A model generated the notes under the pieces. It saw only the letters and a list, made by a program, of their open reading frames with translations, did not search any database and had not been told where the DNA came from. This document shows, in pieces, positions 1-31,375 of a DNA stretch of 64,000 nucleotides. The stretch's first letter is position 1. The number at the start of each line of letters is the position of its first letter. The translations under genes and the position numbers were made by a program. Source of the stretch: Saccostrea echinata (taxonomy: Eukaryota); contig NW_026889779.1 of assembly GCF_033153115.1 (NCBI RefSeq), positions 16,988,001 through 17,052,000 on the forward strand. The letters are read 5' to 3'.

Positions 1-81
1 AATGAGCACCCTTGCTGCTTTGATCAAGTTATAATGCACAACAGGGATCCAAAATAGCTACAAAAGCAGATTGTTACTCAC

Positions 82-176
82 CGCTTTGGCCAATGTTGGC
101 CGCCGTACATAACTGGGCATCTTCATCTGTGTGTAGGCCGGCCTTCTTCCTTCCGCGTCGTCCCTGCTCCGAGTCC
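82..176 (-). other. Array cassette e7 (95 nt)
   Basis: Branch-like TACTAAT (201-207); acceptor gtatatttTCAG|G; donor GCG|GTGAGT. The following intron (109 nt) crosses the unit boundary to the next e1. Confidence 0.78.
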
Positions 177-257
177 CTGAAAATATACAACTGACACAAA
201 ATTAGTACAAATTCAAAACAATGAAACAAATCGAAGAAATTCATCAACACTACATAC

Positions 258-530
258 AACAAATTTAGTGGAAAAAGAAGCTAGTAGGTGAAGACAGTTA
301 CATGGGGAAAGGGCATAAGGGAGTTAAGGGGGTGGGGATGGTTAGTCATGTTAGATTAGGGGGAGTGGATAGGAGACAGGAAAGAGAGAGAACAGAATCA
401 ATAGAATTAATTCAAAATGCTTCTCTATTAGGCTTCCTGGTTGCGGAATTGGATCCTGCTTGCTTCCACTTCTGCTGGGCTGTGCTGGGCTCAGGTGGGC
501 TCTGCTGGGCTGTGCTGCTTGCTGTGCATC
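258..530 (-). other. Array cassette e6 (acceptor fairly clear, 3' end uncertain)
   Basis: Acceptor ctctcgactctcaattgaCAG|G at 531-533. Candidate donors are GTAACT (296-301) or GTATGT (252-257). Contains a 17-nt internal duplication (471-487 and 501-517). Confidence 0.5.
304..337 (+). other. Potential G-quadruplex motif, one per array unit
   Basis: GGGGaaaGGGcataaGGGagttaaGGGGGtGGGG fits the G3+N1-7 x4 pattern. Confidence 0.55.
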
Positions 531-633
531 CTGTCAATTGAGAGTCGAGAGGTCCAAGACTGATACGGTCAACATTAATCGCTAGCGAGGAAAAGATCAA
601 GAAAGGCTACAAGAAGTCGAGTCTGAATCTTAC

Positions 634-699
634 CGCATCTTCTCATGATGGCTGCTGTTGGCATCCGGGTCGGCCAGGAACGAAAAACCTCCTCTCCTG
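634..699 (-). other. Array cassette e5 (63 or 66 nt, NAGNAG acceptor)
   Basis: Acceptor tttgatgtcttggttttgctttgtTAGCAG|G; donor GCG|GTAAGA. Confidence 0.72.
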
Positions 700-844
700 C
701 TAACAAAGCAAAACCAAGACATCAAAGTTACTGCATAGAGTTATCAGAATTCAGCATATGCAAAGAGCAAAGTTAAGATGTCCGTAACACAGGCACAAAG
801 TAATGAAAGTGGACAGAGTGCAATGTGTGCACGTTGCGACTTAC

Positions 845-942
845 CCTCACGTCTGGGATTGGCCGCAGTCCATCACAGAACTCCTGCCGGCAGGTGACGG
901 TCTGCTCTCTCTTCTGCGGAACCAGGCCAGTCTAACCCGTAC
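845..942 (-). other. Array cassette e4 (98 nt)
   Basis: Acceptor tttgacctgtaaacttctttgttaaCAG|G; donor AGG|GTAAGT; stops in all three frames. Confidence 0.75.
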
Positions 943-1051
943 CTGTTAACAAAGAAGTTTACAGGTCAAAACCAAAGTAACACTCCCCCAACACAGAATG
1001 AGTAACAAAAGTCCACAGAGTGCAAGATGTACAGATGGCATGTCTCATTAC

Positions 1052-1158
1052 CTTCAATGCTTGGGTGGGCTGCAGTACATCCCTGAACTCTTTGCACTCC
1101 CTCTGGCAGGCCGAAGTGCGCACTTCATCTCGGAATCCACAACAGCCTAATCCGGAAC
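1052..1158 (-). other. Array cassette e3 (107 nt)
   Basis: Acceptor tttgacttctgcacctttggtgtttaCAG|G; donor AAG|GTAATG. Confidence 0.75.
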
Positions 1159-1264
1159 CTGTAAACACCAAAGGTGCAGAAGTCAAAGAACTGTGCAAAG
1201 TCTGATGAAAAGACTAGACATAGAGACAGTGCACAGAGTGCAGGGCGTGCACAATGTATCTTAC

Positions 1265-1372
1265 CAACCTTGGCTCTGCCGCAGTTGACCTCTGAACTCT
1301 CAGCACTCTTGCTTTTCAGCTGAGGGTCTCCTCTTCAGAGCTGGAGGTAGAGGGCTGCACTACGCTGCATCT
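1265..1372 (-). other. Array cassette e2 (108 nt)
   Basis: Acceptor cttgatgtcttgtctttctaccgTAG|A; donor TTG|GTAAGA; stops in all three frames. Confidence 0.7.
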
Positions 1373-1475
1373 CTACGGTAGAAAGACAAGACATCAAGAG
1401 AGGTGGCGATCTTCATGTGGTGAGAATCAGAACACAAATCAAAGCAGTTAGTACAGGTTTAAACTTCAATCTTAC

Positions 1476-1565
1476 CCTCTCTTCGATGGTTGGCTGCAGT
1501 CGATCCCTGCTCACCAGAATGCTGCTGTACGTCACAGTGGGACTGACGCTTGCCTAACCATTTTC
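1476..1565 (-). other. Array cassette e1 (90 nt; unit-1 coordinates, repeats every 1593 bp)
   Basis: Acceptor tttgacctcccgactttctgtgtgtttCAG|G; donor AGG|GTAAGA. Confidence 0.75.
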
Positions 1566-4500
1566 CTGAAACACACAGAAAGTCGGGAGGTCAAATGAGC
1601 ACCCTTGCTGCTTTGATCAAGTTATAATGCACAACAGGGATCCAAAATAGCTACAAAAGCAGATTGTTACTCACCGCTTTGGCCAATGTTGGCCGCCGTA
1701 CATAACTGGGCATCTTCATCTGTGTGTAGGCCGGCCTTCTTCCTTCCGCGTCGTCCCTGCTCCGAGTCCCTGAAAATATACAACTGACACAAAATTAGTA
1801 CAAATTCAAAACAATGAAACAAATCGAAGAAATTCATCAACACTACATACAACAAATTTAGTGGAAAAAGAAGCTAGTAGGTGAAGACAGTTACATGGGG
1901 AAAGGGCATAAGGGAGTTAAGGGGGTGGGGATGGTTAGTCATGTTAGATTAGGGGGAGTGGATAGGAGACAGGAAAGAGAGAGAACAGAATCAATAGAAT
2001 TAATTCAAAATGCTTCTCTATTAGGCTTCCTGGTTGCGGAATTGGATCCTGCTTGCTTCCACTTCTGCTGGGCTGTGCTGGGCTCAGGTGGGCTCTGCTG
2101 GGCTGTGCTGCTTGCTGTGCATCCTGTCAATTGAGAGTCGAGAGGTCCAAGACTGATACGGTCAACATTAATCGCTAGCGAGGAAAAGATCAAGAAAGGC
2201 TACAAGAAGTCGAGTCTGAATCTTACCGCATCTTCTCATGATGGCTGCTGTTGGCATCCGGGTCGGCCAGGAACGAAAAACCTCCTCTCCTGCTAACAAA
2301 GCAAAACCAAGACATCAAAGTTACTGCATAGAGTTATCAGAATTCAGCATATGCAAAGAGCAAAGTTAAGATGTCCGTAACACAGGCACAAAGTAATGAA
2401 AGTGGACAGAGTGCAATGTGTGCACGTTGCGACTTACCCTCACGTCTGGGATTGGCCGCAGTCCATCACAGAACTCCTGCCGGCAGGTGACGGTCTGCTC
2501 TCTCTTCTGCGGAACCAGGCCAGTCTAACCCGTACCTGTTAACAAAGAAGTTTACAGGTCAAAACCAAAGTAACACTCCCCCAACACAGAATGAGTAACA
2601 AAAGTCCACAGAGTGCAAGATGTACAGATGGCATGTCTCATTACCTTCAATGCTTGGGTGGGCTGCAGTACATCCCTGAACTCTTTGCACTCCCTCTGGC
2701 AGGCCGAAGTGCGCACTTCATCTCGGAATCCACAACAGCCTAATCCGGAACCTGTAAACACCAAAGGTGCAGAAGTCAAAGAACTGTGCAAAGGCTGATG
2801 AAAAGACTAGACATAGAGACAGTGCACAGAGTGCAGGGCGTGCACAATGTATCTTACCAACCTTGGCTCTGCCGCAGTTGACCTCTGAACTCTCAGCACT
2901 CTTGCTTTTCAGCTGAGGGTCTCCTCTTCAGAGCTGGAGGTAGAGGGCTGCACTACGCTGCATCTCTACGGTAGAAAGACAAGACATCAAGAGAGGTGGC
3001 GATCTTCATGCGGTGAGAATCAGAACACAAATCAAAGCAGTTAGTACAGGTTTAAACTTCAATCTTACCCTCTCTTCGATGGTTGGCTGCAGTCGATCCC
3101 TGCTCACCAGAATGCTGCTGTACGTCACAGTGGGACTGACGCTTGCCTAACCATTTTCCTGAAACACACAGAAAGTCGGGAGGTCAAATGAGCACCCTTG
3201 CTGCTTTGATCAAGTTATAATGCACAACAGGGATCCAAAATAGCTACAAAAGCAGATTGTTACTCACCGCTTTGGCCAATGTTGGCCGCCGTACATAACT
3301 GGGCATCTTCATCTGTGTGTAGGCCGGCCTTCTTCCTTCCGCGTCGTCCCTGCTCCGAGTCCCTGAAAATATACAACTGACACAAAATTAGTACAAATTC
3401 AAAACAATGAAACAAATCGAAGAAATTCATCAACACTACATACAACAAATTTAGTGGAAAAAGAAGCTAGTAGGTGAAGACAGTTACATGGGGAAAGGGC
3501 ATAAGGGAGTTAAGGGGGTGGGGATGGTTAGTCATGTTAGATTAGGGGGAGTGGATAGGAGACAGGAAAGAGAGAGAACAGAATCAATAGAATTAATTCA
3601 AAATGCTTCTCTATTAGGCTTCCTGGTTGCGGAATTGGATCCTGCTTGCTTCCACTTCTGCTGGGCTGTGCTGGGCTCAGGTGGGCTCTGCTGGGCTGTG
3701 CTGCTTGCTGTGCATCCTGTCAATTGAGAGTCGAGAGGTCCAAGACTGATACGGTCAACATTAATCGCTAGCGAGGAAAAGATCAAGAAAGGCTACAAGA
3801 AGTCGAGTCTGAATCTTACCGCATCTTCTCATGATGGCTGCTGTTGGCATCCGGGTCGGCCAGGAACGAAAAACCTCCTCTCCTGCTAACAAAGCAAAAC
3901 CAAGACATCAAAGTTACTGCATAGAGTTATCAGAATTCAGCATATGCAAAGAGCAAAGTTAAGATGTCCGTAACACAGGCACAAAGTAATGAAAGTGGAC
4001 AGAGTGCAATGTGTGCACGTTGCGACTTACCCTCACGTCTGGGATTGGCCGCAGTCCATCACAGAACTCCTGCCGGCAGGTGACGGTCTGCTCTCTCTTC
4101 TGCGGAACCAGGCCAGTCTAACCCGTACCTGTTAACAAAGAAGTTTACAGGTCAAAACCAAAGTAACACTCCCCCAACACAGAATGAGTAACAAAAGTCC
4201 ACAGAGTGCAAGATGTACAGATGGCATGTCTCATTACCTTCAATGCTTGGGTGGGCTGCAGTACATCCCTGAACTCTTTGCACTCCCTCTGGCAGGCCGA
4301 AGTGCGCACTTCATCTCGGAATCCACAACAGCCTAATCCGGAACCTGTAAACACCAAAGGTGCAGAAGTCAAAGAACTGTGCAAAGGCTGATGAAAAGAC
4401 TAGACATAGAGACAGTGCACAGAGTGCAGGGCGTGCACAATGTATCTTACCAACCTTGGCTCTGCCGCAGTTGACCTCTGAACTCTCAGCACTCTTGCTT

Positions 4501-7500
4501 TTCAGCTGAGGGTCTCCTCTTCAGAGCTGGAGGTAGAGGGCTGCACTACGCTGCATCTCTACGGTAGAAAGACAAGACATCAAGAGAGGTGGCGATCTTC
4601 ATGCGGTGAGAATCAGAACACAAATCAAAGCAGTTAGTACAGGTTTAAACTTCAATCTTACCCTCTCTTCGATGGTTGGCTGCAGTCGATCCCTGCTCAC
4701 CAGAATGCTGCTGTACGTCACAGTGGGACTGACGCTTGCCTAACCATTTTCCTGAAACACACAGAAAGTCGGGAGGTCAAATGAGCACCCTTGCTGCTTT
4801 GATCAAGTTATAATGCACAACAGGGATCCAAAATAGCTACAAAAGCAGATTGTTACTCACCGCTTTGGCCAATGTTGGCCGCCGTACATAACTGGGCATC
4901 TTCATCTGTGTGTAGGCCGGCCTTCTTCCTTCCGCGTCGTCCCTGCTCCGAGTCCCTGAAAATATACAACTGACACAAAATTAGTACAAATTCAAAACAA
5001 TGAAACAAATCGAAGAAATTCATCAACACTACATACAACAAATTTAGTGGAAAAAGAAGCTAGTAGGTGAAGACAGTTACATGGGGAAAGGGCATAAGGG
5101 AGTTAAGGGGGTGGGGATGGTTAGTCATGTTAGATTAGGGGGAGTGGATAGGAGACAGGAAAGAGAGAGAACAGAATCAATAGAATTAATTCAAAATGCT
5201 TCTCTATTAGGCTTCCTGGTTGCGGAATTGGATCCTGCTTGCTTCCACTTCTGCTGGGCTGTGCTGGGCTCAGGTGGGCTCTGCTGGGCTGTGCTGCTTG
5301 CTGTGCATCCTGTCAATTGAGAGTCGAGAGGTCCAAGACTGATACGGTCAACATTAATCGCTAGCGAGGAAAAGATCAAGAAAGGCTACAAGAAGTCGAG
5401 TCTGAATCTTACCGCATCTTCTCATGATGGCTGCTGTTGGCATCCGGGTCGGCCAGGAACGAAAAACCTCCTCTCCTGCTAACAAAGCAAAACCAAGACA
5501 TCAAAGTTACTGCATAGAGTTATCAGAATTCAGCATATGCAAAGAGCAAAGTTAAGATGTCCGTAACACAGGCACAAAGTAATGAAAGTGGACAGAGTGC
5601 AATGTGTGCACGTTGCGACTTACCCTCACGTCTGGGATTGGCCGCAGTCCATCACAGAACTCCTGCCGGCAGGTGACGGTCTGCTCTCTCTTCTGCGGAA
5701 CCAGGCCAGTCTAACCCGTACCTGTTAACAAAGAAGTTTACAGGTCAAAACCAAAGTAACACTCCCCCAACACAGAATGAGTAACAAAAGTCCACAGAGT
5801 GCAAGATGTACAGATGGCATGTCTCATTACCTTCAATGCTTGGGTGGGCTGCAGTACATCCCTGAACTCTTTGCACTCCCTCTGGCAGGCCGAAGTGCGC
5901 ACTTCATCTCGGAATCCACAACAGCCTAATCCGGAACCTGTAAACACCAAAGGTGCAGAAGTCAAAGAACTGTGCAAAGGCTGATGAAAAGACTAGACAT
6001 AGAGACAGTGCACAGAGTGCAGGGCGTGCACAATGTATCTTACCAACCTTGGCTCTGCCGCAGTTGACCTCTGAACTCTCAGCACTCTTGCTTTTCAGCT
6101 GAGGGTCTCCTCTTCAGAGCTGGAGGTAGAGGGCTGCACTACGCTGCATCTCTACGGTAGAAAGACAAGACATCAAGAGAGGTGGCGATCTTCATGCGGT
6201 GAGAATCAGAACACAAATCAAAGCAGTTAGTACAGGTTTAAACTTCAATCTTACCCTCTCTTCGATGGTTGGCTGCAGTCGATCCCTGCTCACCAGAATG
6301 CTGCTGTACGTCACAGTGGGACTGACGCTTGCCTAACCATTTTCCTGAAACACACAGAAAGTCGGGAGGTCAAATGAGCACCCTTGCTGCTTTGATCAAG
6401 TTATAATGCACAACAGGGATCCAAAATAGCTACAAAAGCAGATTGTTACTCACCGCTTTGGCCAATGTTGGCCGCCGTACATAACTGGGCATCTTCATCT
6501 GTGTGTAGGCCGGCCTTCTTCCTTCCGCGTCGTCCCTGCTCCGAGTCCCTGAAAATATACAACTGACACAAAATTAGTACAAATTCAAAACAATGAAACA
6601 AATCGAAGAAATTCATCAACACTACATACAACAAATTTAGTGGAAAAAGAAGCTAGTAGGTGAAGACAGTTACATGGGGAAAGGGCATAAGGGAGTTAAG
6701 GGGGTGGGGATGGTTAGTCATGTTAGATTAGGGGGAGTGGATAGGAGACAGGAAAGAGAGAGAACAGAATCAATAGAATTAATTCAAAATGCTTCTCTAT
6801 TAGGCTTCCTGGTTGCGGAATTGGATCCTGCTTGCTTCCACTTCTGCTGGGCTGTGCTGGGCTCAGGTGGGCTCTGCTGGGCTGTGCTGCTTGCTGTGCA
6901 TCCTGTCAATTGAGAGTCGAGAGGTCCAAGACTGATACGGTCAACATTAATCGCTAGCGAGGAAAAGATCAAGAAAGGCTACAAGAAGTCGAGTCTGAAT
7001 CTTACCGCATCTTCTCATGATGGCTGCTGTTGGCATCCGGGTCGGCCAGGAACGAAAAACCTCCTCTCCTGCTAACAAAGCAAAACCAAGACATCAAAGT
7101 TACTGCATAGAGTTATCAGAATTCAGCATATGCAAAGAGCAAAGTTAAGATGTCCGTAACACAGGCACAAAGTAATGAAAGTGGACAGAGTGCAATGTGT
7201 GCACGTTGCGACTTACCCTCACGTCTGGGATTGGCCGCAGTCCATCACAGAACTCCTGCCGGCAGGTGACGGTCTGCTCTCTCTTCTGCGGAACCAGGCC
7301 AGTCTAACCCGTACCTGTTAACAAAGAAGTTTACAGGTCAAAACCAAAGTAACACTCCCCCAACACAGAATGAGTAACAAAAGTCCACAGAGTGCAAGAT
7401 GTACAGATGGCATGTCTCATTACCTTCAATGCTTGGGTGGGCTGCAGTACATCCCTGAACTCTTTGCACTCCCTCTGGCAGGCCGAAGTGCGCACTTCAT

Positions 7501-10500
7501 CTCGGAATCCACAACAGCCTAATCCGGAACCTGTAAACACCAAAGGTGCAGAAGTCAAAGAACTGTGCAAAGGCTGATGAAAAGACTAGACATAGAGACA
7601 GTGCACAGAGTGCAGGGCGTGCACAATGTATCTTACCAACCTTGGCTCTGCCGCAGTTGACCTCTGAACTCTCAGCACTCTTGCTTTTCAGCTGAGGGTC
7701 TCCTCTTCAGAGCTGGAGGTAGAGGGCTGCACTACGCTGCATCTCTACGGTAGAAAGACAAGACATCAAGAGAGGTGGCGATCTTCATGCGGTGAGAATC
7801 AGAACACAAATCAAAGCAGTTAGTACAGGTTTAAACTTCAATCTTACCCTCTCTTCGATGGTTGGCTGCAGTCGATCCCTGCTCACCAGAATGCTGCTGT
7901 ACGTCACAGTGGGACTGACGCTTGCCTAACCATTTTCCTGAAACACACAGAAAGTCGGGAGGTCAAATGAGCACCCTTGCTGCTTTGATCAAGTTATAAT
8001 GCACAACAGGGATCCAAAATAGCTACAAAAGCAGATTGTTACTCACCGCTTTGGCCAATGTTGGCCGCCGTACATAACTGGGCATCTTCATCTGTGTGTA
8101 GGCCGGCCTTCTTCCTTCCGCGTCGTCCCTGCTCCGAGTCCCTGAAAATATACAACTGACACAAAATTAGTACAAATTCAAAACAATGAAACAAATCGAA
8201 GAAATTCATCAACACTACATACAACAAATTTAGTGGAAAAAGAAGCTAGTAGGTGAAGACAGTTACATGGGGAAAGGGCATAAGGGAGTTAAGGGGGTGG
8301 GGATGGTTAGTCATGTTAGATTAGGGGGAGTGGATAGGAGACAGGAAAGAGAGAGAACAGAATCAATAGAATTAATTCAAAATGCTTCTCTATTAGGCTT
8401 CCTGGTTGCGGAATTGGATCCTGCTTGCTTCCACTTCTGCTGGGCTGTGCTGGGCTCAGGTGGGCTCTGCTGGGCTGTGCTGCTTGCTGTGCATCCTGTC
8501 AATTGAGAGTCGAGAGGTCCAAGACTGATACGGTCAACATTAATCGCTAGCGAGGAAAAGATCAAGAAAGGCTACAAGAAGTCGAGTCTGAATCTTACCG
8601 CATCTTCTCATGATGGCTGCTGTTGGCATCCGGGTCGGCCAGGAACGAAAAACCTCCTCTCCTGCTAACAAAGCAAAACCAAGACATCAAAGTTACTGCA
8701 TAGAGTTATCAGAATTCAGCATATGCAAAGAGCAAAGTTAAGATGTCCGTAACACAGGCACAAAGTAATGAAAGTGGACAGAGTGCAATGTGTGCACGTT
8801 GCGACTTACCCTCACGTCTGGGATTGGCCGCAGTCCATCACAGAACTCCTGCCGGCAGGTGACGGTCTGCTCTCTCTTCTGCGGAACCAGGCCAGTCTAA
8901 CCCGTACCTGTTAACAAAGAAGTTTACAGGTCAAAACCAAAGTAACACTCCCCCAACACAGAATGAGTAACAAAAGTCCACAGAGTGCAAGATGTACAGA
9001 TGGCATGTCTCATTACCTTCAATGCTTGGGTGGGCTGCAGTACATCCCTGAACTCTTTGCACTCCCTCTGGCAGGCCGAAGTGCGCACTTCATCTCGGAA
9101 TCCACAACAGCCTAATCCGGAACCTGTAAACACCAAAGGTGCAGAAGTCAAAGAACTGTGCAAAGGCTGATGAAAAGACTAGACATAGAGACAGTGCACA
9201 GAGTGCAGGGCGTGCACAATGTATCTTACCAACCTTGGCTCTGCCGCAGTTGACCTCTGAACTCTCAGCACTCTTGCTTTTCAGCTGAGGGTCTCCTCTT
9301 CAGAGCTGGAGGTAGAGGGCTGCACTACGCTGCATCTCTACGGTAGAAAGACAAGACATCAAGAGAGGTGGCGATCTTCATGCGGTGAGAATCAGAACAC
9401 AAATCAAAGCAGTTAGTACAGGTTTAAACTTCAATCTTACCCTCTCTTCGATGGTTGGCTGCAGTCGATCCCTGCTCACCAGAATGCTGCTGTACGTCAC
9501 AGTGGGACTGACGCTTGCCTAACCATTTTCCTGAAACACACAGAAAGTCGGGAGGTCAAATGAGCACCCTTGCTGCTTTGATCAAGTTATAATGCACAAC
9601 AGGGATCCAAAATAGCTACAAAAGCAGATTGTTACTCACCGCTTTGGCCAATGTTGGCCGCCGTACATAACTGGGCATCTTCATCTGTGTGTAGGCCGGC
9701 CTTCTTCCTTCCGCGTCGTCCCTGCTCCGAGTCCCTGAAAATATACAACTGACACAAAATTAGTACAAATTCAAAACAATGAAACAAATCGAAGAAATTC
9801 ATCAACACTACATACAACAAATTTAGTGGAAAAAGAAGCTAGTAGGTGAAGACAGTTACGTGGGGAAAGGGCATAAGGGAGTTAAGGGGGTGGGGATGGT
9901 TAGTCATGTTAGATTAGGGGGAGTGGATAGGAGACAGGAAAGAGAGAGAACAGAATCAATAGAATTAATTCAAAATGCTTCTCTATTAGGCTTCCTGGTT
10001 GCGGAATTGGATCCTGCTTGCTTCCACTTCTGCTGGGCTGTGCTGGGCTCAGGTGGGCTCTGCTGGGCTGTGCTGCTTGCTGTGCATCCTGTCAATTGAG
10101 AGTCGAGAGGTCCAAGACTGATACGGTCAACATTAATCGCTAGCGAGGAAAAGATCAAGAAAGGCTACAAGAAGTCGAGTCTGAATCTTACCGCATCTTC
10201 TCATGATGGCTGCTGTTGGCATCCGGGTCGGCCAGGAACGAAAAACCTCCTCTCCTGCTAACAAAGCAAAACCAAGACATCAAAGTTACTGCATAGAGTT
10301 ATCAGAATTCAGCATATGCAAAGAGCAAAGTTAAGATGTCCGTAACACAGGCACAAAGTAATGAAAGTGGACAGAGTGCAATGTGTGCACGTTGCGACTT
10401 ACCCTCACGTCTGGGATTGGCCGCAGTCCATCACAGAACTCCTGCCGGCAGGTGACGGTCTGCTCTCTCTTCTGCGGAACCAGGCCAGTCTAACCCGTAC

Positions 10501-13500
10501 CTGTTAACAAAGAAGTTTACAGGTCAAAACCAAAGTAACACTCCCCCAACACAGAATGAGTAACAAAAGTCCACAGAGTGCAAGATGTACAGATGGCATG
10601 TCTCATTACCTTCAATGCTTGGGTGGGCTGCAGTACATCCCTGAACTCTTTGCACTCCCTCTGGCAGGCCGAAGTGCGCACTTCATCTCGGAATCCACAA
10701 CAGCCTAATCCGGAACCTGTAAACACCAAAGGTGCAGAAGTCAAAGAACTGTGCAAAGGCTGATGAAAAGACTAGACATAGAGACAGTGCACAGAGTGCA
10801 GGGCGTGCACAATGTATCTTACCAACCTTGGCTCTGCCGCAGTTGACCTCTGAACTCTCAGCACTCTTGCTTTTCAGCTGAGGGTCTCCTCTTCAGAGCT
10901 GGAGGTAGAGGGCTGCACTACGCTGCATCTCTACGGTAGAAAGACAAGACATCAAGAGAGGTGGCGATCTTCATGCGGTGAGAATCAGAACACAAATCAA
11001 AGCAGTTAGTACAGGTTTAAACTTCAATCTTACCCTCTCTTCGATGGTTGGCTGCAGTCGATCCCTGCTCACCAGAATGCTGCTGTACGTCACAGTGGGA
11101 CTGACGCTTGCCTAACCATTTTCCTGAAACACACAGAAAGTCGGGAGGTCAAATGAGCACCCTTGCTGCTTTGATCAAGTTATAATGCACAACAGGGATC
11201 CAAAATAGCTACAAAAGCAGATTGTTACTCACCGCTTTGGCCAATGTTGGCCGCCGTACATAACTGGGCATCTTCATCTGTGTGTAGGCCGGCCTTCTTC
11301 CTTCCGCGTCGTCCCTGCTCCGAGTCCCTGAAAATATACAACTGACACAAAATTAGTACAAATTCAAAACAATGAAACAAATCGAAGAAATTCATCAACA
11401 CTACATACAACAAATTTAGTGGAAAAAGAAGCTAGTAGGTGAAGACAGTTACATGGGGAAAGGGCATAAGGGAGTTAAGGGGGTGGGGATGGTTAGTCAT
11501 GTTAGATTAGGGGGAGTGGATAGGAGACAGGAAAGAGAGAGAACAGAATCAATAGAATTAATTCAAAATGCTTCTCTATTAGGCTTCCTGGTTGCGGAAT
11601 TGGATCCTGCTTGCTTCCACTTCTGCTGGGCTGTGCTGGGCTCAGGTGGGCTCTGCTGGGCTGTGCTGCTTGCTGTGCATCCTGTCAATTGAGAGTCGAG
11701 AGGTCCAAGACTGATACGGTCAACATTAATCGCTAGCGAGGAAAAGATCAAGAAAGGCTACAAGAAGTCGAGTCTGAATCTTACCGCATCTTCTCATGAT
11801 GGCTGCTGTTGGCATCCGGGTCGGCCAGGAACGAAAAACCTCCTCTCCTGCTAACAAAGCAAAACCAAGACATCAAAGTTACTGCATAGAGTTATCAGAA
11901 TTCAGCATATGCAAAGAGCAAAGTTAAGATGTCCGTAACACAGGCACAAAGTAATGAAAGTGGACAGAGTGCAATGTGTGCACGTTGCGACTTACCCTCA
12001 CGTCTGGGATTGGCCGCAGTCCATCACAGAACTCCTGCCGGCAGGTGACGGTCTGCTCTCTCTTCTGCGGAACCAGGCCAGTCTAACCCGTACCTGTTAA
12101 CAAAGAAGTTTACAGGTCAAAACCAAAGTAACACTCCCCCAACACAGAATGAGTAACAAAAGTCCACAGAGTGCAAGATGTACAGATGGCATGTCTCATT
12201 ACCTTCAATGCTTGGGTGGGCTGCAGTACATCCCTGAACTCTTTGCACTCCCTCTGGCAGGCCGAAGTGCGCACTTCATCTCGGAATCCACAACAGCCTA
12301 ATCCGGAACCTGTAAACACCAAAGGTGCAGAAGTCAAAGAACTGTGCAAAGGCTGATGAAAAGACTAGACATAGAGACAGTGCACAGAGTGCAGGGCGTG
12401 CACAATGTATCTTACCAACCTTGGCTCTGCCGCAGTTGACCTCTGAACTCTCAGCACTCTTGCTTTTCAGCTGAGGGTCTCCTCTTCAGAGCTGGAGGTA
12501 GAGGGCTGCACTACGCTGCATCTCTACGGTAGAAAGACAAGACATCAAGAGAGGTGGCGATCTTCATGCGGTGAGAATCAGAACACAAATCAAAGCAGTT
12601 AGTACAGGTTTAAACTTCAATCTTACCCTCTCTTCGATGGTTGGCTGCAGTCGATCCCTGCTCACCAGAATGCTGCTGTACGTCACAGTGGGACTGACGC
12701 TTGCCTAACCATTTTCCTGAAACACACAGAAAGTCGGGAGGTCAAATGAGCACCCTTGCTGCTTTGATCAAGTTATAATGCACAACAGGGATCCAAAATA
12801 GCTACAAAAGCAGATTGTTACTCACCGCTTTGGCCAATGTTGGCCGCCGTACATAACTGGGCATCTTCATCTGTGTGTAGGCCGGCCTTCTTCCTTCCGC
12901 GTCGTCCCTGCTCCGAGTCCCTGAAAATATACAACTGACACAAAATTAGTACAAATTCAAAACAATGAAACAAATCGAAGAAATTCATCAACACTACATA
13001 CAACAAATTTAGTGGAAAAAGAAGCTAGTAGGTGAAGACAGTTACATGGGGAAAGGGCATAAGGGAGTTAAGGGGGTGGGGATGGTTACTCATGTTAGAT
13101 TAGGGGGAGTGGATAGGAGACAGGAAAGAGAGAGAACAGAATCAATAGAATTAATTCAAAATGCTTCTCTATTAGGCTTCCTGGTTGCGGAATTGGATCC
13201 TGCTTGCTTCCACTTCTGCTGGGCTGTGCTGGGCTCAGGTGGGCTCTGCTGGGCTGTGCTGCTTGCTGTGCATCCTGTCAATTGAGAGTCGAGAGGTCCA
13301 AGACTGATACGGTCAACATTAATCGCTAGCGAGGAAAAGATCAAGAAAGGCTACAAGAAGTCGAGTCTGAATCTTACCGCATCTTCTCATGATGGCTGCT
13401 GTTGGCATCCGGGTCGGCCAGGAACGAAAAACCTCCTCTCCTGCTAACAAAGCAAAACCAAGACATCAAAGTTACTGCATAGAGTTATCAGAATTCAGCA

Positions 13501-16500
13501 TATGCAAAGAGCAAAGTTAAGATGTCCGTAACACAGGCACAAAGTAATGAAAGTGGACAGAGTGCAATGTGTGCACGTTGCGACTTACCCTCACGTCTGG
13601 GATTGGCCGCAGTCCATCACAGAACTCCTGCCGGCAGGTGACGGTCTGCTCTCTCTTCTGCGGAACCAGGCCAGTCTAACCCGTACCTGTTAACAAAGAA
13701 GTTTACAGGTCAAAACCAAAGTAACACTCCCCCAACACAGAATGAGTAACAAAAGTCCACAGAGTGCAAGATGTACAGATGGCATGTCTCATTACCTTCA
13801 ATGCTTGGGTGGGCTGCAGTACATCCCTGAACTCTTTGCACTCCCTCTGGCAGGCCGAAGTGCGCACTTCATCTCGGAATCCACAACAGCCTAATCCGGA
13901 ACCTGTAAACACCAAAGGTGCAGAAGTCAAAGAACTGTGCAAAGTCTGATGAAAAGACTAGACATAGAGACAGTGCACAGAGTGCAGGGCGTGCACAATG
14001 TATCTTACCAACCTTGGCTCTGCCGCAGTTGACCTCTGAACTCTCAGCACTCTTGCTTTTCAGCTGAGGGTCTCCTCTTCAGAGCTGGAGGTAGAGGGCT
14101 GCACTACGCTGCATCTCTACGGTAGAAAGACAAGACATCAAGAGAGGTGGCGATCTTCATGTGGTGAGAATCAGAACACAAATCAAAGCAGTTAGTACAG
14201 GTTTAAACTTCAATCTTACCCTCTCTTCGATGGTTGGCTGCAGTCGATCCCTGCTCACCAGAATGCTGCTGTACGTCACAGTGGGACTGACGCTTGCCTA
14301 ACCATTTTCCTGAAACACACAGAAAGTCGGGAGGTCAAATGAGCACCCTTGCTGCTTTGATCAAGTTATAATGCACAACAGGGATCCAAAATAGCTACAA
14401 AAGCAGATTGTTACTCACCGCTTTGGCCAATGTTGGCCGCCGTACATAACTGGGCATCTTCATCTGTGTGTAGGCCGGCCTTCTTCCTTCCGCGTCGTCC
14501 CTGCTCCGAGTCCCTGAAAATATACAACTGACACAAAATTAGTACAAATTCAAAACAATGAAACAAATCGAAGAAATTCATCAACACTACATACAACAAA
14601 TTTAGTGGAAAAAGAAGCTAGTAGGTGAAGACAGTTACATGGGGAAAGGGCATAAGGGAGTTAAGGGGGTGGGGATGGTTAGTCATGTTAGATTAGGGGG
14701 AGTGGATAGGAGACAGGAAAGAGAGAGAACAGAATCAATAGAATTAATTCAAAATGCTTCTCTATTAGGCTTCCTGGTTGCGGAATTGGATCCTGCTTGC
14801 TTCCACTTCTGCTGGGCTGTGCTGGGCTCAGGTGGGCTCTGCTGGGCTGTGCTGCTTGCTGTGCATCCTGTCAATTGAGAGTCGAGAGGTCCAAGACTGA
14901 TACGGTCAACATTAATCGCTAGCGAGGAAAAGATCAAGAAAGGCTACAAGAAGTCGAGTCTGAATCTTACCGCATCTTCTCATGATGGCTGCTGTTGGCA
15001 TCCGGGTCGGCCAGGAACGAAAAACCTCCTCTCCTGCTAACAAAGCAAAACCAAGACATCAAAGTTACTGCATAGAGTTATCAGAATTCAGCATATGCAA
15101 AGAGCAAAGTTAAGATGTCCGTAACACAGGCACAAAGTAATGAAAGTGGACAGAGTGCAATGTGTGCACGTTGCGACTTACCCTCACGTCTGGGATTGGC
15201 CGCAGTCCATCACAGAACTCCTGCCGGCAGGTGACGGTCTGCTCTCTCTTCTGCGGAACCAGGCCAGTCTAACCCGTACCTGTTAACAAAGAAGTTTACA
15301 GGTCAAAACCAAAGTAACACTCCCCCAACACAGAATGAGTAACAAAAGTCCACAGAGTGCAAGATGTACAGATGGCATGTCTCATTACCTTCAATGCTTG
15401 GGTGGGCTGCAGTACATCCCTGAACTCTTTGCACTCCCTCTGGCAGGCCGAAGTGCGCACTTCATCTCGGAATCCACAACAGCCTAATCCGGAACCTGTA
15501 AACACCAAAGGTGCAGAAGTCAAAGAACTGTGCAAAGGCTGATGAAAAGACTAGACATAGAGACAGTGCACAGAGTGCAGGGCGTGCACAATGTATCTTA
15601 CCAACCTTGGCTCTGCCGCAGTTGACCTCTGAACTCTCAGCACTCTTGCTTTTCAGCTGAGGGTCTCCTCTTCAGAGCTGGAGGTAGAGGGCTGCACTAC
15701 GCTGCATCTCTACGGTAGAAAGACAAGACATCAAGAGAGGTGGCGATCTTCATGCGGTGAGAATCAGAACACAAATCAAAGCAGTTAGTACAGGTTTAAA
15801 CTTCAATCTTACCCTCTCTTCGATGGTTGGCTGCAGTCGATCCCTGCTCACCAGAATGCTGCTGTACGTCACAGTGGGACTGACGCTTGCCTAACCATTT
15901 TCCTGAAACACACAGAAAGTCGGGAGGTCAAATGAGCACCCTTGCTGCTTTGATCAAGTTATAATGCACAACAGGGATCCAAAATAGCTACAAAAGCAGA
16001 TTGTTACTCACCGCTTTGGCCAATGTTGGCCGCCGTACATAACTGGGCATCTTCATCTGTGTGTAGGCCGGCCTTCTTCCTTCCGCGTCGTCCCTGCTCC
16101 GAGTCCCTGAAAATATACAACTGACACAAAATTAGTACAAATTCAAAACAATGAAACAAATCGAAGAAATTCATCAACACTACATACAACAAATTTAGTG
16201 GAAAAAGAAGCTAGTAGGTGAAGACAGTTACATGGGGAAAGGGCATAAGGGAGTTAAGGGGGTGGGGATGGTTAGTCATGTTAGATTAGGGGGAGTGGAT
16301 AGGAGACAGGAAAGAGAGAGAACAGAATCAATAGAATTAATTCAAAATGCTTCTCTATTAGGCTTCCTGGTTGCGGAATTGGATCCTGCTTGCTTCCACT
16401 TCTGCTGGGCTGTGCTGGGCTCAGGTGGGCTCTGCTGGGCTGTGCTGCTTGCTGTGCATCCTGTCAATTGAGAGTCGAGAGGTCCAAGACTGATACGGTC

Positions 16501-19500
16501 AACATTAATCGCTAGCGAGGAAAAGATCAAGAAAGGCTACAAGAAGTCGAGTCTGAATCTTACCGCATCTTCTCATGATGGCTGCTGTTGGCATCCGGGT
16601 CGGCCAGGAACGAAAAACCTCCTCTCCTGCTAACAAAGCAAAACCAAGACATCAAAGTTACTGCATAGAGTTATCAGAATTCAGCATATGCAAAGAGCAA
16701 AGTTAAGATGTCCGTAACACAGGCACAAAGTAATGAAAGTGGACAGAGTGCAATGTGTGCACGTTGCGACTTACCCTCACGTCTGGGATTGGCCGCAGTC
16801 CATCACAGAACTCCTGCCGGCAGGTGACGGTCTGCTCTCTCTTCTGCGGAACCAGGCCAGTCTAACCCGTACCTGTTAACAAAGAAGTTTACAGGTCAAA
16901 ACCAAAGTAACACTCCCCCAACACAGAATGAGTAACAAAAGTCCACAGAGTGCAAGATGTACAGATGGCATGTCTCATTACCTTCAATGCTTGGGTGGGC
17001 TGCAGTACATCCCTGAACTCTTTGCACTCCCTCTGGCAGGCCGAAGTGCGCACTTCATCTCGGAATCCACAACAGCCTAATCCGGAACCTGTAAACACCA
17101 AAGGTGCAGAAGTCAAAGAACTGTGCAAAGGCTGATGAAAAGACTAGACATAGAGACAGTGCACAGAGTGCAGGGCGTGCACAATGTATCTTACCAACCT
17201 TGGCTCTGCCGCAGTTGACCTCTGAACTCTCAGCACTCTTGCTTTTCAGCTGAGGGTCTCCTCTTCAGAGCTGGAGGTAGAGGGCTGCACTACGCTGCAT
17301 CTCTACGGTAGAAAGACAAGACATCAAGAGAGGTGGCGATCTTCATGCGGTGAGAATCAGAACACAAATCAAAGCAGTTAGTACAGGTTTAAACTTCAAT
17401 CTTACCCTCTCTTCGATGGTTGGCTGCAGTCGATCCCTGCTCACCAGAATGCTGCTGTACGTCACAGTGGGACTGACGCTTGCCTAACCATTTTCCTGAA
17501 ACACACAGAAAGTCGGGAGGTCAAATGAGCACCCTTGCTGCTTTGATCAAGTCATAATGCACAACAGGGATCCAAAATAGCTACAAAAGCAGATTGTTAC
17601 TCACCGCTTTGGCCAATGTTGGCCGCCGTACATAACTGGGCATCTTCATCTGTGTGTAGGCCGGCCTTCTTCCTTCCGCGTCGTCCCTGCTCCGAGTCCC
17701 TGAAAATATACAACTGACACAAAATTAGTACAAATTCAAAACAATGAAACAAATCGAAGAAATTCATCAACACTACATACAACAAATTTAGTGGAAAAAG
17801 AAGCTAGTAGGTGAAGACAGTTACATGGGGAAAGGGCATAAGGGAGTTAAGGGGGTGGGGATGGTTACTCATGTTAGATTAGGGGGAGTGGATAGGAGAC
17901 AGGAAAGAGAGAGAACAGAATCAATAGAATTAATTCAAAATGCTTCTCTATTAGGCTTCCTGGTTGCGGAATTGGATCCTGCTTGCTTCCACTTCTGCTG
18001 GGCTGTGCTGGGCTCAGGTGGGCTCTGCTGGGCTGTGCTGCTTGCTGTGCATCCTGTCAATTGAGAGTCGAGAGGTCCAAGACTGATACGGTCAACATTA
18101 ATCGCTAGCGAGGAAAAGATCAAGAAAGGCTACAAGAAGTCGAGTCTGAATCTTACCGCATCTTCTCATGATGGCTGCTGTTGGCATCCGGGTCGGCCAG
18201 GAACGAAAAACCTCCTCTCCTGCTAACAAAGCAAAACCAAGACATCAAAGTTACTGCATAGAGTTATCAGAATTCAGCATATGCAAAGAGCAAAGTTAAG
18301 ATGTCCGTAACACAGGCACAAAGTAATGAAAGTGGACAGAGTGCAATGTGTGCACGTTGCGACTTACCCTCACGTCTGGGATTGGCCGCAGTCCATCACA
18401 GAACTCCTGCCGGCAGGTGACGGTCTGCTCTCTCTTCTGCGGAACCAGGCCAGTCTAACCCGTACCTGTTAACAAAGAAGTTTACAGGTCAAAACCAAAG
18501 TAACACTCCCCCAACACAGAATGAGTAACAAAAGTCCACAGAGTGCAAGATGTACAGATGGCATGTCTCATTACCTTCAATGCTTGGGTGGGCTGCAGTA
18601 CATCCCTGAACTCTTTGCACTCCCTCTGGCAGGCCGAAGTGCGCACTTCATCTCGGAATCCACAACAGCCTAATCCGGAACCTGTAAACACCAAAGGTGC
18701 AGAAGTCAAAGAACTGTGCAAAGGCTGATGAAAAGACTAGACATAGAGACAGTGCACAGAGTGCAGGGCGTGCACAATGTATCTTACCAACCTTGGCTCT
18801 GCCGCAGTTGACCTCTGAACTCTCAGCACTCTTGCTTTTCAGCTGAGGGTCTCCTCTTCAGAGCTGGAGGTAGAGGGCTGCACTACGCTGCATCTCTACG
18901 GTAGAAAGACAAGACATCAAGAGAGGTGGCGATCTTCATGCGGTGAGAATCAGAACACAAATCAAAGCAGTTAGTACAGGTTTAAACTTCAATCTTACCC
19001 TCTCTTCGATGGTTGGCTGCAGTCGATCCCTGCTCACCAGAATGCTGCTGTACGTCACAGTGGGACTGACGCTTGCCTAACCATTTTCCTGAAACACACA
19101 GAAAGTCGGGAGGTCAAATGAGCACCCTTGCTGCTTTGATCAAGTTATAATGCACAACAGGGATCCAAAATAGCTACAAAAGCAGATTGTTACTCACCGC
19201 TTTGGCCAATGTTGGCCGCCGTACATAACTGGGCATCTTCATCTGTGTGTAGGCCGGCCTTCTTCCTTCCGCGTCGTCCCTGCTCCGAGTCCCTGAAAAT
19301 ATACAACTGACACAAAATTAGTACAAATTCAAAACAATGAAACAAATCGAAGAAATTCATCAACACTACATACAACAAATTTAGTGGAAAAAGAAGCTAG
19401 TAGGTGAAGACAGTTACATGGGGAAAGGGCATAAGGGAGTTAAGGGGGTGGGGATGGTTACTCATGTTAGATTAGGGGGAGTGGATAGGAGACAGGAAAG

Positions 19501-28500: not shown

Positions 28501-29904
28501 GTGAGAATCAGAACACAAATCAAAGCAGTTAGTACAGGTTTAAACTTCAATCTTACCCTCTCTTCGATGGTTGGCTGCAGTCGATCCCTGCTCACCAGAA
28601 TGCTGCTGTACGTCACAGTGGGACTGACGCTTGCCTAACCATTTTCCTGAAACACACAGAAAGTCGGGAGGTCAAATGAGCACCCTTGCTGCTTTGATCA
28701 AGTTATAATGCACAACAGGGATCCAAAATAGCTACAAAAGCAGATTGTTACTCACCGCTTTGGCCAATGTTGGCCGCCGTACATAACTGGGCATCTTCAT
28801 CTGTGTGTAGGCCGGCCTTCTTCCTTCCGCGTCGTCCCTGCTCCGAGTCCCTGAAAATATACAACTGACACAAAATTAGTACAAATTCAAAACAATGAAA
28901 CAAATCGAAGAAATTCATCAACACTACATACAACAAATTTAGTGGAAAAAGAAGCTAGTAGGTGAAGACAGTTACATGGGGAAAGGGCATAAGGGAGTTA
29001 AGGGGGTGGGGATGGTTAGTCATGTTAGATTAGGGGGAGTGGATAGGAGACAGGAAAGAGAGAGAACAGAATCAATAGAATTAATTCAAAATGCTTCTCT
29101 ATTAGGCTTCCTGGTTGCGGAATTGGATCCTGCTTGCTTCCACTTCTGCTGGGCTGTGCTGGGCTCAGGTGGGCTCTGCTGGGCTGTGCTGCTTGCTGTG
29201 CATCCTGTCAATTGAGAGTCGAGAGGTCCAAGACTGATACGGTCAACATTAATCGCTAGCGAGGAAAAGATCAAGAAAGGCTACAAGAAGTCGAGTCTGA
29301 ATCTTACCGCATCTTCTCATGATGGCTGCTGTTGGCATCCGGGTCGGCCAGGAACGAAAAACCTCCTCTCCTGCTAACAAAGCAAAACCAAGACATCAAA
29401 GTTACTGCATAGAGTTATCAGAATTCAGCATATGCAAAGAGCAAAGTTAAGATGTCCGTAACACAGGCACAAAGTAATGAAAGTGGACAGAGTGCAATGT
29501 GTGCACGTTGCGACTTACCCTCACGTCTGGGATTGGCCGCAGTCCATCACAGAACTCCTGCCGGCAGGTGACGGTCTGCTCTCTCTTCTGCGGAACCAGG
29601 CCAGTCTAACCCGTACCTGTTAACAAAGAAGTTTACAGGTCAAAACCAAAGTAACACTCCCCCAACACAGAATGAGTAACAAAAGTCCACAGAGTGCAAG
29701 ATGTACAGATGGCATGTCTCATTACCTTCAATGCTTGGGTGGGCTGCAGTACATCCCTGAACTCTTTGCACTCCCTCTGGCAGGCCGAAGTGCGCACTTC
29801 ATCTCGGAACCCACAACAGCCTAATCCGGAACCTGTAAACACCAAAGGTGCAGAAGTCAAAGAGCTGTGACCTAACAGAAGAATGAAGTTGGAAGTCACT
29901 CGGA

Positions 29905-31306: not shown

Positions 31307-31375
31307 GTCGCATAATATTTCGTCCGCCTCGTTTAAAGGTCCGGGGGGACCTAATACGATAACACATAAGGTCCA
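31307..31375 (+). mobile_element. Solo copy of the terminal repeat of the 34038-37273 element
   Basis: gtcgcataatatttcgtccgcctcgtttaaaggtccggggggacctaatacgata matches 34044 onward. Confidence 0.7.

What the first reader, a model, noticed from the sequence alone, without database searches (positions are those of the whole stretch)
531..1770. The 1593-bp unit is a higher-order repeat of diverged ~210-bp exon+intron monomers that kept their splice signals
Seen: donors fall at 633, 844, 1051, 1264, 1475 and 1674 (spacing 211, 207, 213, 211, 199). Paralogy shows in introns (cagagtgca ... ttacc near 814, 1016, 1234) and exon starts (ggttaggc, gattaggc, ggttagac). The monomers are otherwise hard to align, yet all keep GT and AG, and five keep a YTTGAY branch-like motif ending 20-24 nt before the intron end. 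Inference: an old round of exon-intron duplication under selection for splicing, then recent amplification of the whole block.
Basis: partly seen in the sequence, partly recalled or inferred. Interest (0 to 1): 0.8.

Follow-up and report, generated by a model that had tools for sequence, protein, structure and literature searches.

The report
Spliced exon-intron satellite array, non-coding
A 53-kb tandem repeat in this (reportedly oyster) genome is built from about 210-bp exon-plus-intron modules; it is transcribed and spliced at every module into a repetitive RNA that codes for no protein, so only its splice signals, not its exon text, are being kept.

Summary
On the minus strand each 1593-bp unit carries G|GTRAG donors at 633, 844, 1051, 1475 and 1674. 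The sixth donor actually used is at 1268, not 1264.

Assembled contigs from four public runs (two studies) contain only exon words. They show all six GT..AG introns removed, giving a circular 911-nt spliced unit.

The exon ending at 1675 is not a 95-nt exon. It is the tail of a 449-nt exon that includes an intron-like, unspliced stretch, probably a seventh module whose donor decayed.

Module paralogy is strong for two modules and three intron starts. It is moderate for two more exons and weak for the remaining modules, which share only in-register motifs.

The array has 33 copies (52.9 kb, about 99.9% identical). It belongs to a family of about 790 units, of which six further arrays were examined (unit lengths about 550 to 1593 bp), some also expressed.

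Between arrays, exons diverge as fast as introns and collect more indels, with no codon-position bias. This array has stops in every frame. Donors (30/30 columns) and the TTGA branch core (20/20) are invariant against a 72% background.

Verdict: a spliced, non-coding higher-order macrosatellite, a new variant of a known kind. The scan had noted this stretch before, on this same window only.

The parts
1..29868 (-). Window part of the tandem array: 18.75 of 33 copies of the 1593-bp unit. The array continues upstream of the window to G000:C30:~16964920.
   Evidence: Identity at lag 1593 is 0.996-1.0 per kb with 30 substitutions and no indels. The upstream extent comes, and the 33 copies.
1675..2123 (-). 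The 449-nt exon, with the same phase as window 82-530. It has three parts: E7 (2030-2123), an intron-like CU-rich middle (1770-2029), and E1 (1675-1769). The E1 part lies inside the finding.
   Evidence: Contigs lie continuously over the equivalent copy at 28755-29203. The middle has GC 0.365 and pyrimidine fraction 0.67, like the introns.
1566..1674 (-). Intron I1 (109 nt), GTGAGT...TTTCAG. TTTGAC at 1590-1595 ends 24 nt before the exon.
   Evidence: Joint skipping 109 with CT..AC ends in 4 runs; motif position.
1476..1565 (-). Exon E2 (90 nt). Its first 15 nt are specific to this array lineage.
1373..1475 (-). Intron I2 (103 nt). CTTGAT at 1393-1398 ends 20 nt before the exon.
   Evidence: Joint skipping 103.
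1269..1372 (-). Exon E3 (104 nt).
   Evidence: Joint skipping 110 with CT..AC ends in 4 runs. The sister arrays lack this GT and keep GTAAG.
1159..1268 (-). Intron I3 (110 nt). TGCACTCTGT lies near its 5' end. TTTGAC at 1182-1187 ends 23 nt before the exon.
1052..1158 (-). Exon E4 (107 nt).
   Evidence: The module is paralogous to the E5 module (nhmmer E 1e-18).
943..1051 (-). Intron I4 (109 nt). TTTGAC at 965-970 ends 22 nt before the exon.
   Evidence: The 'goes back 1484' joint equals 1593-109.
845..942 (-). Exon E5 (98 nt).
697..844 (-). Intron I5 (148 nt). TTTGAT at 721-726 ends 24 nt before the exon.
   Evidence: Joint skipping 148.
634..696 (-). Exon E6 (63 nt). Its acceptor GCAG| is specific to this array; sister arrays have TTAG| 3 nt upstream.
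531..633 (-). Intron I6 (103 nt). The YTTGAY motif is lost here (CTTGGAC) but present in sister arrays (CCTTTGACC).
   Evidence: Joint skipping 103.
650..658 (-). One of six in-register ACNGCRGCC motifs. The others are at 861-869, 1068-1076, 1277-1285, 1492-1500 and 1691-1699. Five of the six end exactly 16 nt before the exon end.
   Evidence: 7 hits per unit against 0.13 expected. The motif is no more conserved between arrays than background (34/54 columns).

Best explanation
SHOWN. The stretch is one unit of a 33-copy, 52.9-kb macrosatellite. The unit is a block of exon+intron modules of about 200-220 bp. The array is transcribed on the minus strand. Every module is recognised by a strong donor (G|GTRAG), a TTGAY branch-like site 20-24 nt upstream of a pyrimidine tract, and a CAG or TAG acceptor. 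Six short introns (103-148 nt) per unit are removed, leaving a 911-nt spliced repeat that runs from unit to unit. That RNA has stops in all frames, and 911 is not a multiple of 3, so it is non-coding.

INFERRED. The modules arose by serial duplication of one exon+intron module, possibly once coding for a Cys-containing peptide of about 33 residues. One module lost its donor (CAG|GAAGCC), and its intron is now retained inside the 449-nt exon. The whole block then spread as a family of arrays that are kept homogeneous by unequal crossing-over and gene conversion. Mispairing between paralogous introns adds or removes whole modules.

What is maintained is the ability to be spliced, not the exon text. 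I cannot decide whether the spliced RNA itself has a job or whether splicing is kept only because a long, unspliced repetitive transcript would be harmful.
For: RNA evidence.
- Circular contigs of 931-932 letters (a 911-912-nt circle once the 20-nt end overlap is removed) in runs X1, X2, X3 and X5, from two studies, match with 0-1 mismatches. They lie only on exons and join them across six GT..AG introns of 109, 103, 110, 109, 148 and 103 nt.
- These runs hold 0.39-0.42 of the unit's 31-letter words. About 0.46 of such words lie wholly inside exons (my arithmetic from the exon lengths). So intron sequence is absent and the material is RNA.

No coding capacity.
- The longest open frame in the spliced unit is 108 codons.
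- E3 and E5 have stops in all frames as first modelled.
- This array carries a TGA in E7, two compensating frameshifts in E5 and a TAG in the E2 insertion, relative to sister arrays.
- Substitutions between arrays fall evenly on codon positions: 19/19/20 and 34/33/32.
- Exon identity equals intron identity (0.82 against 0.82-0.83; 0.89 against 0.89). Exons carry 38-115 gap columns against 3-10 in introns, counting the array pairs not affected by the C9b module loss.

Splice signals conserved. Donor 5-mers are invariant in 30/30 columns (P 4.5e-5). The TTGA core is invariant in 20/20 (P 0.0013) and YTTGAY in 28/30 (P 0.004), against a background of 0.716.

Module paralogy.

Module-wise change. 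Array C9b (1330-bp unit) lacks exactly the E4 module, with the junction inside the paralogous introns I3 and I4.

Retained intron. The middle of the long exon has intron-like composition, CTAAC-type motifs, a pyrimidine tract and a conserved TTTYCAG.
Against: - The runs are only guessed to be RNA by the tool, and they are contigs. They cannot show starts, ends, strand or full length, so one transcript through all 33 units is inferred, not seen.
- A promoter inside each unit is not excluded. The most conserved 26-mer contains TATATTT.
- One sister array (C9c) keeps a 233-codon open frame ending at a conserved TAATAG, so a coding past, or a coding present elsewhere in the family, is possible.
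- Conservation of splice sites rests on four arrays that are not independent lineages. The acceptor trinucleotides alone are not significant (16/18, P 0.08).
- Paralogy of the E1, E6 and E7 exons is weak.
Confidence: 0.72

Rival explanations
1. This is transcribed junk. A satellite derived from a pseudogene happens to lie in a transcribed locus. Its splice sites are intact only because the arrays are young and homogenised, not because splicing is selected. The spliced RNA has no role.
For: Exons evolve like introns and collect more indels. There is no codon signal. The ACNGCRGCC motif is no better conserved than background. In a decayed relic copy beside the array, the E1 donor is lost.
Against: Donor 5-mers are invariant in 30/30 columns and the TTGA core in 20/20, across arrays that differ at 18-25% of sites. 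Where a site moved, a working replacement sits within 2-4 nt: the E3 donor and E6 acceptor in this array, and the E3 acceptor in C9b. At least two array types are expressed; the joint skipping 123 fits the sister-type E2 and has higher depth.
Confidence: 0.3
2. The array is a host gene for small RNAs. As in the SNORD116, SNORD115 or C19MC arrays, the non-coding exons only serve to release a snoRNA or miRNA from each intron.
For: The architecture is the same: tandem non-coding exon-intron units, with exons no better conserved than introns. Introns I1 and I6 are among the best conserved parts between sister arrays (0.94-0.97).
Against: There is no Rfam match at E up to 1 on either strand. No intron folds better than its shuffles (z -1.0 to +2.5). 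No C-box to D-box arrangement lies inside an intron. Introns of 103-148 nt leave little room once the splice signals are counted.
Confidence: 0.07
3. It is a protein-coding repeat: either a giant repetitive protein, or tandem copies of a small gene for a Cys-containing protein of about 190 residues.
For: Array C9c has an open frame through E1-E7 ending at a conserved double stop, TAATAG. E4 and E5 are in the same frame there, with a shared G-[LF]-x-[WC]-S-G-S...T-x-x-C-R-x-x-x-C-x-G-x-R pattern. Indels in E4 between sister arrays are multiples of 3.
Against: This array has stops in every frame, and its spliced unit of 911 nt is not a multiple of 3. No ATG precedes E3 in C9c. Substitutions are even over codon positions, and 38 of 52 changed codons are non-synonymous. 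Pfam finds nothing on any exon peptide. Arrays C9a, C9b and C10 break the frame.
Confidence: 0.05
4. The ~210-bp period is not common descent. It comes from convergent constraints of splicing (exon and intron size, donor, branch, acceptor) on unrelated sequence.
For: Several module pairs are not significantly alike once intron and exon composition is kept in the null (E1-E2, E1-E3, E2-E6, E6-E7 and others). Autocorrelation is weak.
Against: The E4 and E5 modules align over their full length (E 1e-18). The starts of I3, I4 and I5 match (E 4e-6 to 4e-5). E2 and the 3' end of E3 match E4 (E 3.5e-4 and 5.5e-4). A 9-mer that plays no known part in splicing sits exactly 16 nt from the exon end in five exons. 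A sister array has lost exactly one module by intron-intron recombination.
Confidence: 0.06

Closest known systems
Mouse Dxz4 macrosatellite transcript (PMC3491370)
   Same: A tandem array is transcribed through. The RNA splices to the same exon in every monomer, giving a non-coding RNA with repeated exons (RT-PCR ladders in that paper).
   Different: Dxz4 has one 163-nt exon per monomer and few monomers (the paper's RT-PCR across the array runs from exon 1 to exon 9/10), at one locus with an external promoter shown by reporter assay. Here there are six exons per 1.6-kb unit, 33 units, a unit that is itself a repeat of exon-intron modules, and a family of about 790 units on several contigs. 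The promoter was not tested.
SNORD116/SNORD115 host-gene arrays (IPW-A exons; PMC4742849, PMC12429941) and C19MC (own knowledge)
   Same: Tandemly repeated non-coding exon-intron units are spliced into a long RNA. The exon text is poorly constrained.
   Different: Those arrays exist to release one snoRNA or miRNA per intron. Here no small-RNA gene could be found in the introns.
Higher-order repeats of alpha satellite (own knowledge)
   Same: The hierarchy is the same: diverged monomers form a multi-monomer unit, and nearly identical copies of the unit are maintained by unequal exchange. Variants gain or lose whole monomers.
   Different: Alpha-satellite monomers are 171 bp and are not exons. 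Here each monomer is an exon plus an intron with working splice signals.
Coding exon-block repeats: nebulin super-repeats, NBPF Olduvai triplets, DAZ repeat (own knowledge)
   Same: Exon+intron blocks are duplicated in tandem with higher-order periodicity and concerted evolution.
   Different: Those keep an open reading frame and show protein-level constraint. This array has neither.
Splice-junction 'mirage' minisatellites, noted elsewhere in this genome by earlier follow-ups (s1-803023 and others; not checked here)
   Same: Tandem copies of splice signals in the same genome.
   Different: Mirages are short copies of an exon edge sitting unused in an intron. Here complete exons and introns are repeated, and every copy is used.

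Membership tests
Higher-order-repeat satellite / macrosatellite | Head-to-tail array of a long unit, with very high identity between units | tested here: met
   33 copies of 1593 bp, identity 0.996-1.0 per kb, no indels.
Higher-order-repeat satellite / macrosatellite | The unit is composed of several diverged monomers of common origin | tested here: inconclusive
   Met for the E4 and E5 modules, the starts of I3, I4 and I5, E2, the 3' end of E3, and I1 with I6. For the E1, E6 and E7 exons only the in-register motif is shared.
Higher-order-repeat satellite / macrosatellite | Variants that differ by whole monomers | tested here: met
   The C9b unit of 1330 bp lacks the E4 module. The C62 array repeats only about 550 bp of the unit.
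Spliced macrosatellite non-coding RNA (Dxz4 type) | The same exon(s) are spliced in every unit of the array | tested here: met
   The circular spliced contig carries all six junctions in 4 runs.
Spliced macrosatellite non-coding RNA (Dxz4 type) | No coding capacity | tested here: met
   The longest open frame is 108 codons, with stops in all frames. There is no codon-position bias.
Spliced macrosatellite non-coding RNA (Dxz4 type) | One promoter outside the array drives a transcript through it | not testable with these tools
   Contigs show no starts or ends. A 5' flank conserved upstream of five array loci is suggestive only.
Small-RNA host-gene array (SNORD116/115, C19MC) | Each intron carries a snoRNA or miRNA gene | tested here: not met
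   Rfam finds nothing. Intron folds score z -1.0 to +2.5. No C-box to D-box arrangement lies inside an intron. An unknown class of small RNA is not excluded.
Protein-coding exon-repeat gene | An open reading frame through the repeated exons, and protein-level constraint | tested here: not met
Splice-junction 'mirage' minisatellite | Short unit consisting of an exon edge plus splice site, lying inside an intron, with the copies unused | tested here: not met
   The unit holds whole exons and introns, and all copies are spliced.

The most novel reading that the evidence does not exclude
The genome carries a family of about 790 exon-intron satellite units. They are made into very long, multi-exon non-coding RNAs: up to about 200 exons and about 30 kb after splicing for this array. 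Their only selected property would be that they are spliced. Such an RNA could work by engaging the splicing machinery or by carrying its deposits (for example exon-junction complexes, or CU-tract binding proteins on the retained intron) in bulk, rather than through its sequence.
Probability: 0.12. Interest if true: 0.85.

Novelty: new variant of a known kind. Interest (0 to 1): 0.6.

Why it matters
Satellite DNA and spliced genes are usually treated as opposites. Here a macrosatellite is an array of working exons and introns, and its unit records two rounds of amplification: module, then block.

Many near-identical and many diverged copies exist in one genome. The family is therefore a natural experiment on what a splice site needs. 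Donors and the TTGAY branch site stay fixed, shifted sites are replaced within a few bases, and exon text drifts freely.

It is also a candidate for a very long repetitive non-coding RNA in a mollusc. In addition, it warns genome annotators that such arrays will be called either as 'satellite' or as strange multi-exon genes.

Tried and rejected
- Ungapped autocorrelation of the unit gave only z 3-4 at lags 199-218, too blunt for modules of unequal length. I replaced it with local alignment and profile searches.
- A first null that shuffled whole modules inflated the scores, because it destroyed the GC-rich-exon and AT-rich-intron layout. I redid it with introns and exons shuffled separately.
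- Pairwise 'identity' from cheap-gap global alignments is not meaningful, and I do not use it.
- Rfam on two units, both strands, E up to 1: nothing.
- Pfam on six exon peptides: nothing.
- Intron folding, C/D-box and poly(A)-signal scans: nothing.
- The idea that the ACNGCRGCC motif is a selected signal at the exon-junction-complex position: it is in register within this unit, but no better conserved between arrays than background. I read it as a relic of common descent.
- I considered and rejected a giant repetitive protein, and separate small genes per unit. There is no ATG, no poly(A) signal in the unit, contigs run through the long exon, and the frames are broken.
- The immediate flanks of the C9 arrays (last 700-800 nt before the arrays) showed no unit-related sequence and looked like dispersed repeats by eye.
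- The big protein searches were not used. The non-coding verdict rests on frames and substitution patterns, not on the absence of relatives.
Full report
WHAT IS THERE

The window opens inside a tandem array with a period of exactly 1593 bp. Identity between successive copies is 0.996-1.0 per kb, with 30 substitutions and no indel. The repeat stops at about window 29868. Fetching the contig upstream shows that the array starts near G000:C30:16964920. It is therefore 52.9 kb long with 33 copies. GC is 47% in the array and 31-35% beside it.

- All six donor positions read G|GTAAG, G|GTAAT or G|GTGAG on the minus strand.
- Each is preceded, about 100 nt upstream, by a pyrimidine tract ending in CAG or TAG.
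- YTTGAY occurs 8 times per unit against 2.1 expected, always in introns. Five copies end 20-24 nt before the exon.
- The intron motif TGCACTCTGT and the exon starts GGTTAGGC, GATTAGGC and GGTTAGAC are present.

RNA EVIDENCE

The single run search found five runs (two studies, two organism labels) that hold 0.39-0.42 of the unit's sampled words. By my arithmetic from the exon lengths, about 0.46 of all 31-letter words lie wholly inside exons. These runs therefore hold the exons and not the introns, which argues that they are RNA although the tool only guesses so.

I laid four of them on window 28100-33400. Each gave a contig of 910-932 letters with 0-1 mismatches, lying only on exons and closing on itself. 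The joints skip 109, 103, 110, 148 and 103 nt with CT..AC ends (GT..AG on the minus strand). One 'goes back 1484' joint equals 1593-109.

In unit coordinates the exons are:

- 530..82 (that is, 2123..1675), 449 nt
- 1565-1476
- 1372-1269
- 1158-1052
- 942-845
- 696-634

Their sum is 911 nt.

Two corrections follow. First, the donor used after E3 is AAG|GTTGGT, so the intron starts at 1268. This is a GT that only this array has. The GTAAG at 1264 is the ancestral site kept by all sister arrays. Second, the acceptor-like ttttcag at 1769 is not used. The exon that ends at 1675 is the tail of a 449-nt exon.

A second, deeper joint skipping 123 nt fits the shorter E2 of the sister arrays, so other arrays of the family are expressed too.

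Contigs cannot show starts, ends or full length. That one RNA runs through all 33 units is inference.

NOT CODING

- E3 and E5 have stops in all three frames.
- The spliced unit is 911 nt, not a multiple of 3, and its longest open frame is 108 codons.
- Against the sister arrays, this array carries a TGA in E7 where the others read CGG, GCG or GCC. It also has a -1 and a +1 indel in E5 and a TAG in a 15-nt E2 insertion.
- One sister array (C9c) does keep a 233-codon open frame through all exons, ending at a conserved TAATAG. There E4 and E5 share a Cys-containing pattern in the same frame. A coding ancestor is therefore plausible.
- Substitutions between arrays in that frame fall evenly on codon positions (19/19/20 and 34/33/32). 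Most changed codons change the residue: 38 of 52, and 63 of 76.
- No ATG precedes E3 in C9c, and the other arrays break the frame.
- Pfam finds nothing on the exon peptides.

Reading frames across junctions were only counted inside scripts, and translations were printed exon by exon. No joined exon sequence was printed, typed or sent to any search tool.

ARE THE MODULES RELATED?

With a null that shuffles introns and exons separately, these pairs stand out:

- E4 and E5 modules: z 11.8
- the three introns before E4, E5 and E6: z 5.6-7.5
- exons E2, E3, E4 and E5: z 3.6-9.1 in five of their six pairings (E2-E3 only 1.8)
- I1 with I6: z 5.3

Profiles built from five arrays give the following:

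- E4 module against E5 module: E 1e-18, over nearly the full length
- starts of I3, I4 and I5: E 4e-6 to 4e-5
- E4 against E2: E 3.5e-4
- E4 against the 3' end of E3: E 5.5e-4
- I6 against I1: E 1.3e-3
- E1: only E 0.06-0.09
- the E6 and E7 exons: nothing

ACNGCRGC occurs 7 times per unit against 0.13 expected. That is one copy per exon plus a second copy in E2, and in five exons the motif ends exactly 16 nt before the exon end.

The unit is therefore a higher-order repeat for at least four modules. For the rest, common descent is likely but shown only by in-register motifs.

The middle of the long exon has intron-like composition: GC 0.365 and pyrimidines 0.67, against 0.54-0.61 and 0.36-0.44 in exons. 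It also has CTAAC-type motifs, a long pyrimidine tract and a conserved TTTYCAG. E7 ends in CAG|GAAGCC, one base from a donor. I infer a seventh module whose donor decayed, leaving its intron retained.

THE FAMILY

A 26-mer from the unit (up to 2 mismatches) occurs 787 times in the genome and never in the reversed control. The arrays examined are:

- C9:36.135 Mb: about 1.7 units of 1535 bp
- C9:50.753-50.776 Mb: about 17 units of 1330 bp
- C9:47.316-47.382 Mb: about 44 units of about 1505 bp
- C10:7.286 Mb: units of about 1498 bp
- contig C265
- C62:7.95 Mb: a unit of about 550 bp that holds only the long exon

The 1330-bp unit lacks exactly the E4 module, with the junction inside the paralogous introns I3 and I4. 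The C9 arrays share both flanks. Pieces of this array's 5' flank (window 29879-30261, 30728-31073, 32435-32630) recur in the same order upstream of five other array loci. Beside this array lie two AT-rich decayed copies of part of the unit.

WHAT IS CONSERVED

Between arrays, exon identity equals intron identity (0.82 against 0.82-0.83, and 0.89 against 0.89). Exons carry far more gap columns.

Of all columns, 71.6% are invariant in four arrays. Against that background:

- donor 5-mers: 30/30 invariant, P 4.5e-5
- TTGA core of the branch-like motif: 20/20, P 0.0013
- YTTGAY: 28/30, P 0.004
- acceptor trinucleotides: 16/18, P 0.08
- ACNGCRGCC: 34/54, no better than background

Where a site has moved, a usable one lies within 2-4 nt. 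The motif at the exon-junction-complex position looks like a relic, not a selected signal.

HOW IT MOST LIKELY WORKS

Shown: minus-strand transcription and removal of six short introns per unit, giving a non-coding repeat of 911 nt that continues from unit to unit.

Inferred:

- intron-definition splicing, helped by the sharp contrast between purine- and GC-rich exons and pyrimidine- and AT-rich introns
- growth and homogenisation by unequal exchange
- module gain and loss by exchange between paralogous introns
- maintenance of splice competence rather than of exon text

I cannot separate 'the spliced RNA has a role' from 'splicing is kept because an unspliced 50-kb repetitive transcript is harmful'. 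The plain neutral reading keeps about 0.3. No small-RNA gene was found in the introns.

COMPARISON WITH WHAT IS KNOWN

- The nearest precedent is mouse Dxz4, where a transcript splices to the same 163-nt exon in each macrosatellite monomer (PMC3491370).
- The SNORD116/115 arrays have the same exon-intron architecture but exist for their intronic snoRNAs (PMC4742849, PMC12429941).
- Alpha-satellite higher-order repeats share the hierarchy but not the splicing. This rests on my own knowledge.
- Nebulin, NBPF and DAZ share exon-block repeats but are coding. This also rests on my own knowledge.
- I found no report of such a family in molluscs. That search is limited to the held library.

Earlier notes of this scan call the genome an oyster; I did not verify this.

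LIMITS

There was one read-laying run only, so I have no evidence on the transcript's start, end, strand-specific depth or tissue. The family was sampled, not catalogued.

Noticed in passing
G000:C9:50752800-50776046 (L033-L036): A sister array of about 17 units of 1330 bp, 75-79% identical to this unit. It lacks exactly the E4 exon+intron module; the junction lies inside the paralogous introns I3 and I4.
   Followed up: partly
G000:C62:7947001-7957000 (L041, minus strand): At least nine tandem copies of a unit of about 550 bp, made only of the long exon (unit positions 45-487). They are followed by fragments of E4-E5, E2 and E6, so a sub-block of the unit has been re-amplified on its own.
   Followed up: partly
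G000:C9:47315844-47382009 (L037, L039, L040): The largest array seen: about 44 units of about 1505 bp. Its spliced model keeps a 233-codon open frame from E1 to a conserved TAATAG, but has no ATG before E3 and no codon-position bias.
   Followed up: partly
L010:4097-4494 and L010:6091-6499 (G000:C30:16962097-16964499): Two AT-rich, decayed partial copies of the unit (E1-I1-E2-I2-E3) lie just beyond the 3' end of the array. In one, the E1 donor is lost while the E2 donor and acceptor survive.
   Followed up: partly
window 29879-30261, 30728-31073, 32435-32630: Three pieces of the 5' flank recur in the same order upstream of the arrays at C9:36.13, 47.31, 48.97 and 50.75 Mb and at C10:7.28 Mb. 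They may hold the shared promoter or first exons. C9:48.97 Mb points to a further array that I did not fetch.
   Followed up: partly
window 31304-31377: A segment of about 74 bp matches dozens of places genome-wide at 92-97% identity and is present in RNA contigs. It is probably a short dispersed element.
   Followed up: no
window 471-517 and every 1593 bp after: The 5' part of exon E7 is a 10-bp minisatellite (GCCCAGCAGA on the minus strand, 4.7 copies). Sister arrays C9c and C10 have about two copies fewer.
   Followed up: partly
window 1-29868 versus 29869-64000: There is a sharp GC step: 47% in the array against 31-38% outside. The decayed relic copies beside the array are AT-rich, as if homogenised copies are held at high GC.
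   Followed up: no
window 39949-40283, 59021-59299, 62495-62734: Unrelated tandem repeats with periods of 33, 32 and 53 bp lie in the single-copy part of the window.
   Followed up: no
window 28447-28454 (exon E3), run X1: One run's contig carries one extra letter in E3, giving a 912-nt spliced unit instead of 911. It is likely a copy or allele variant.
   Followed up: no
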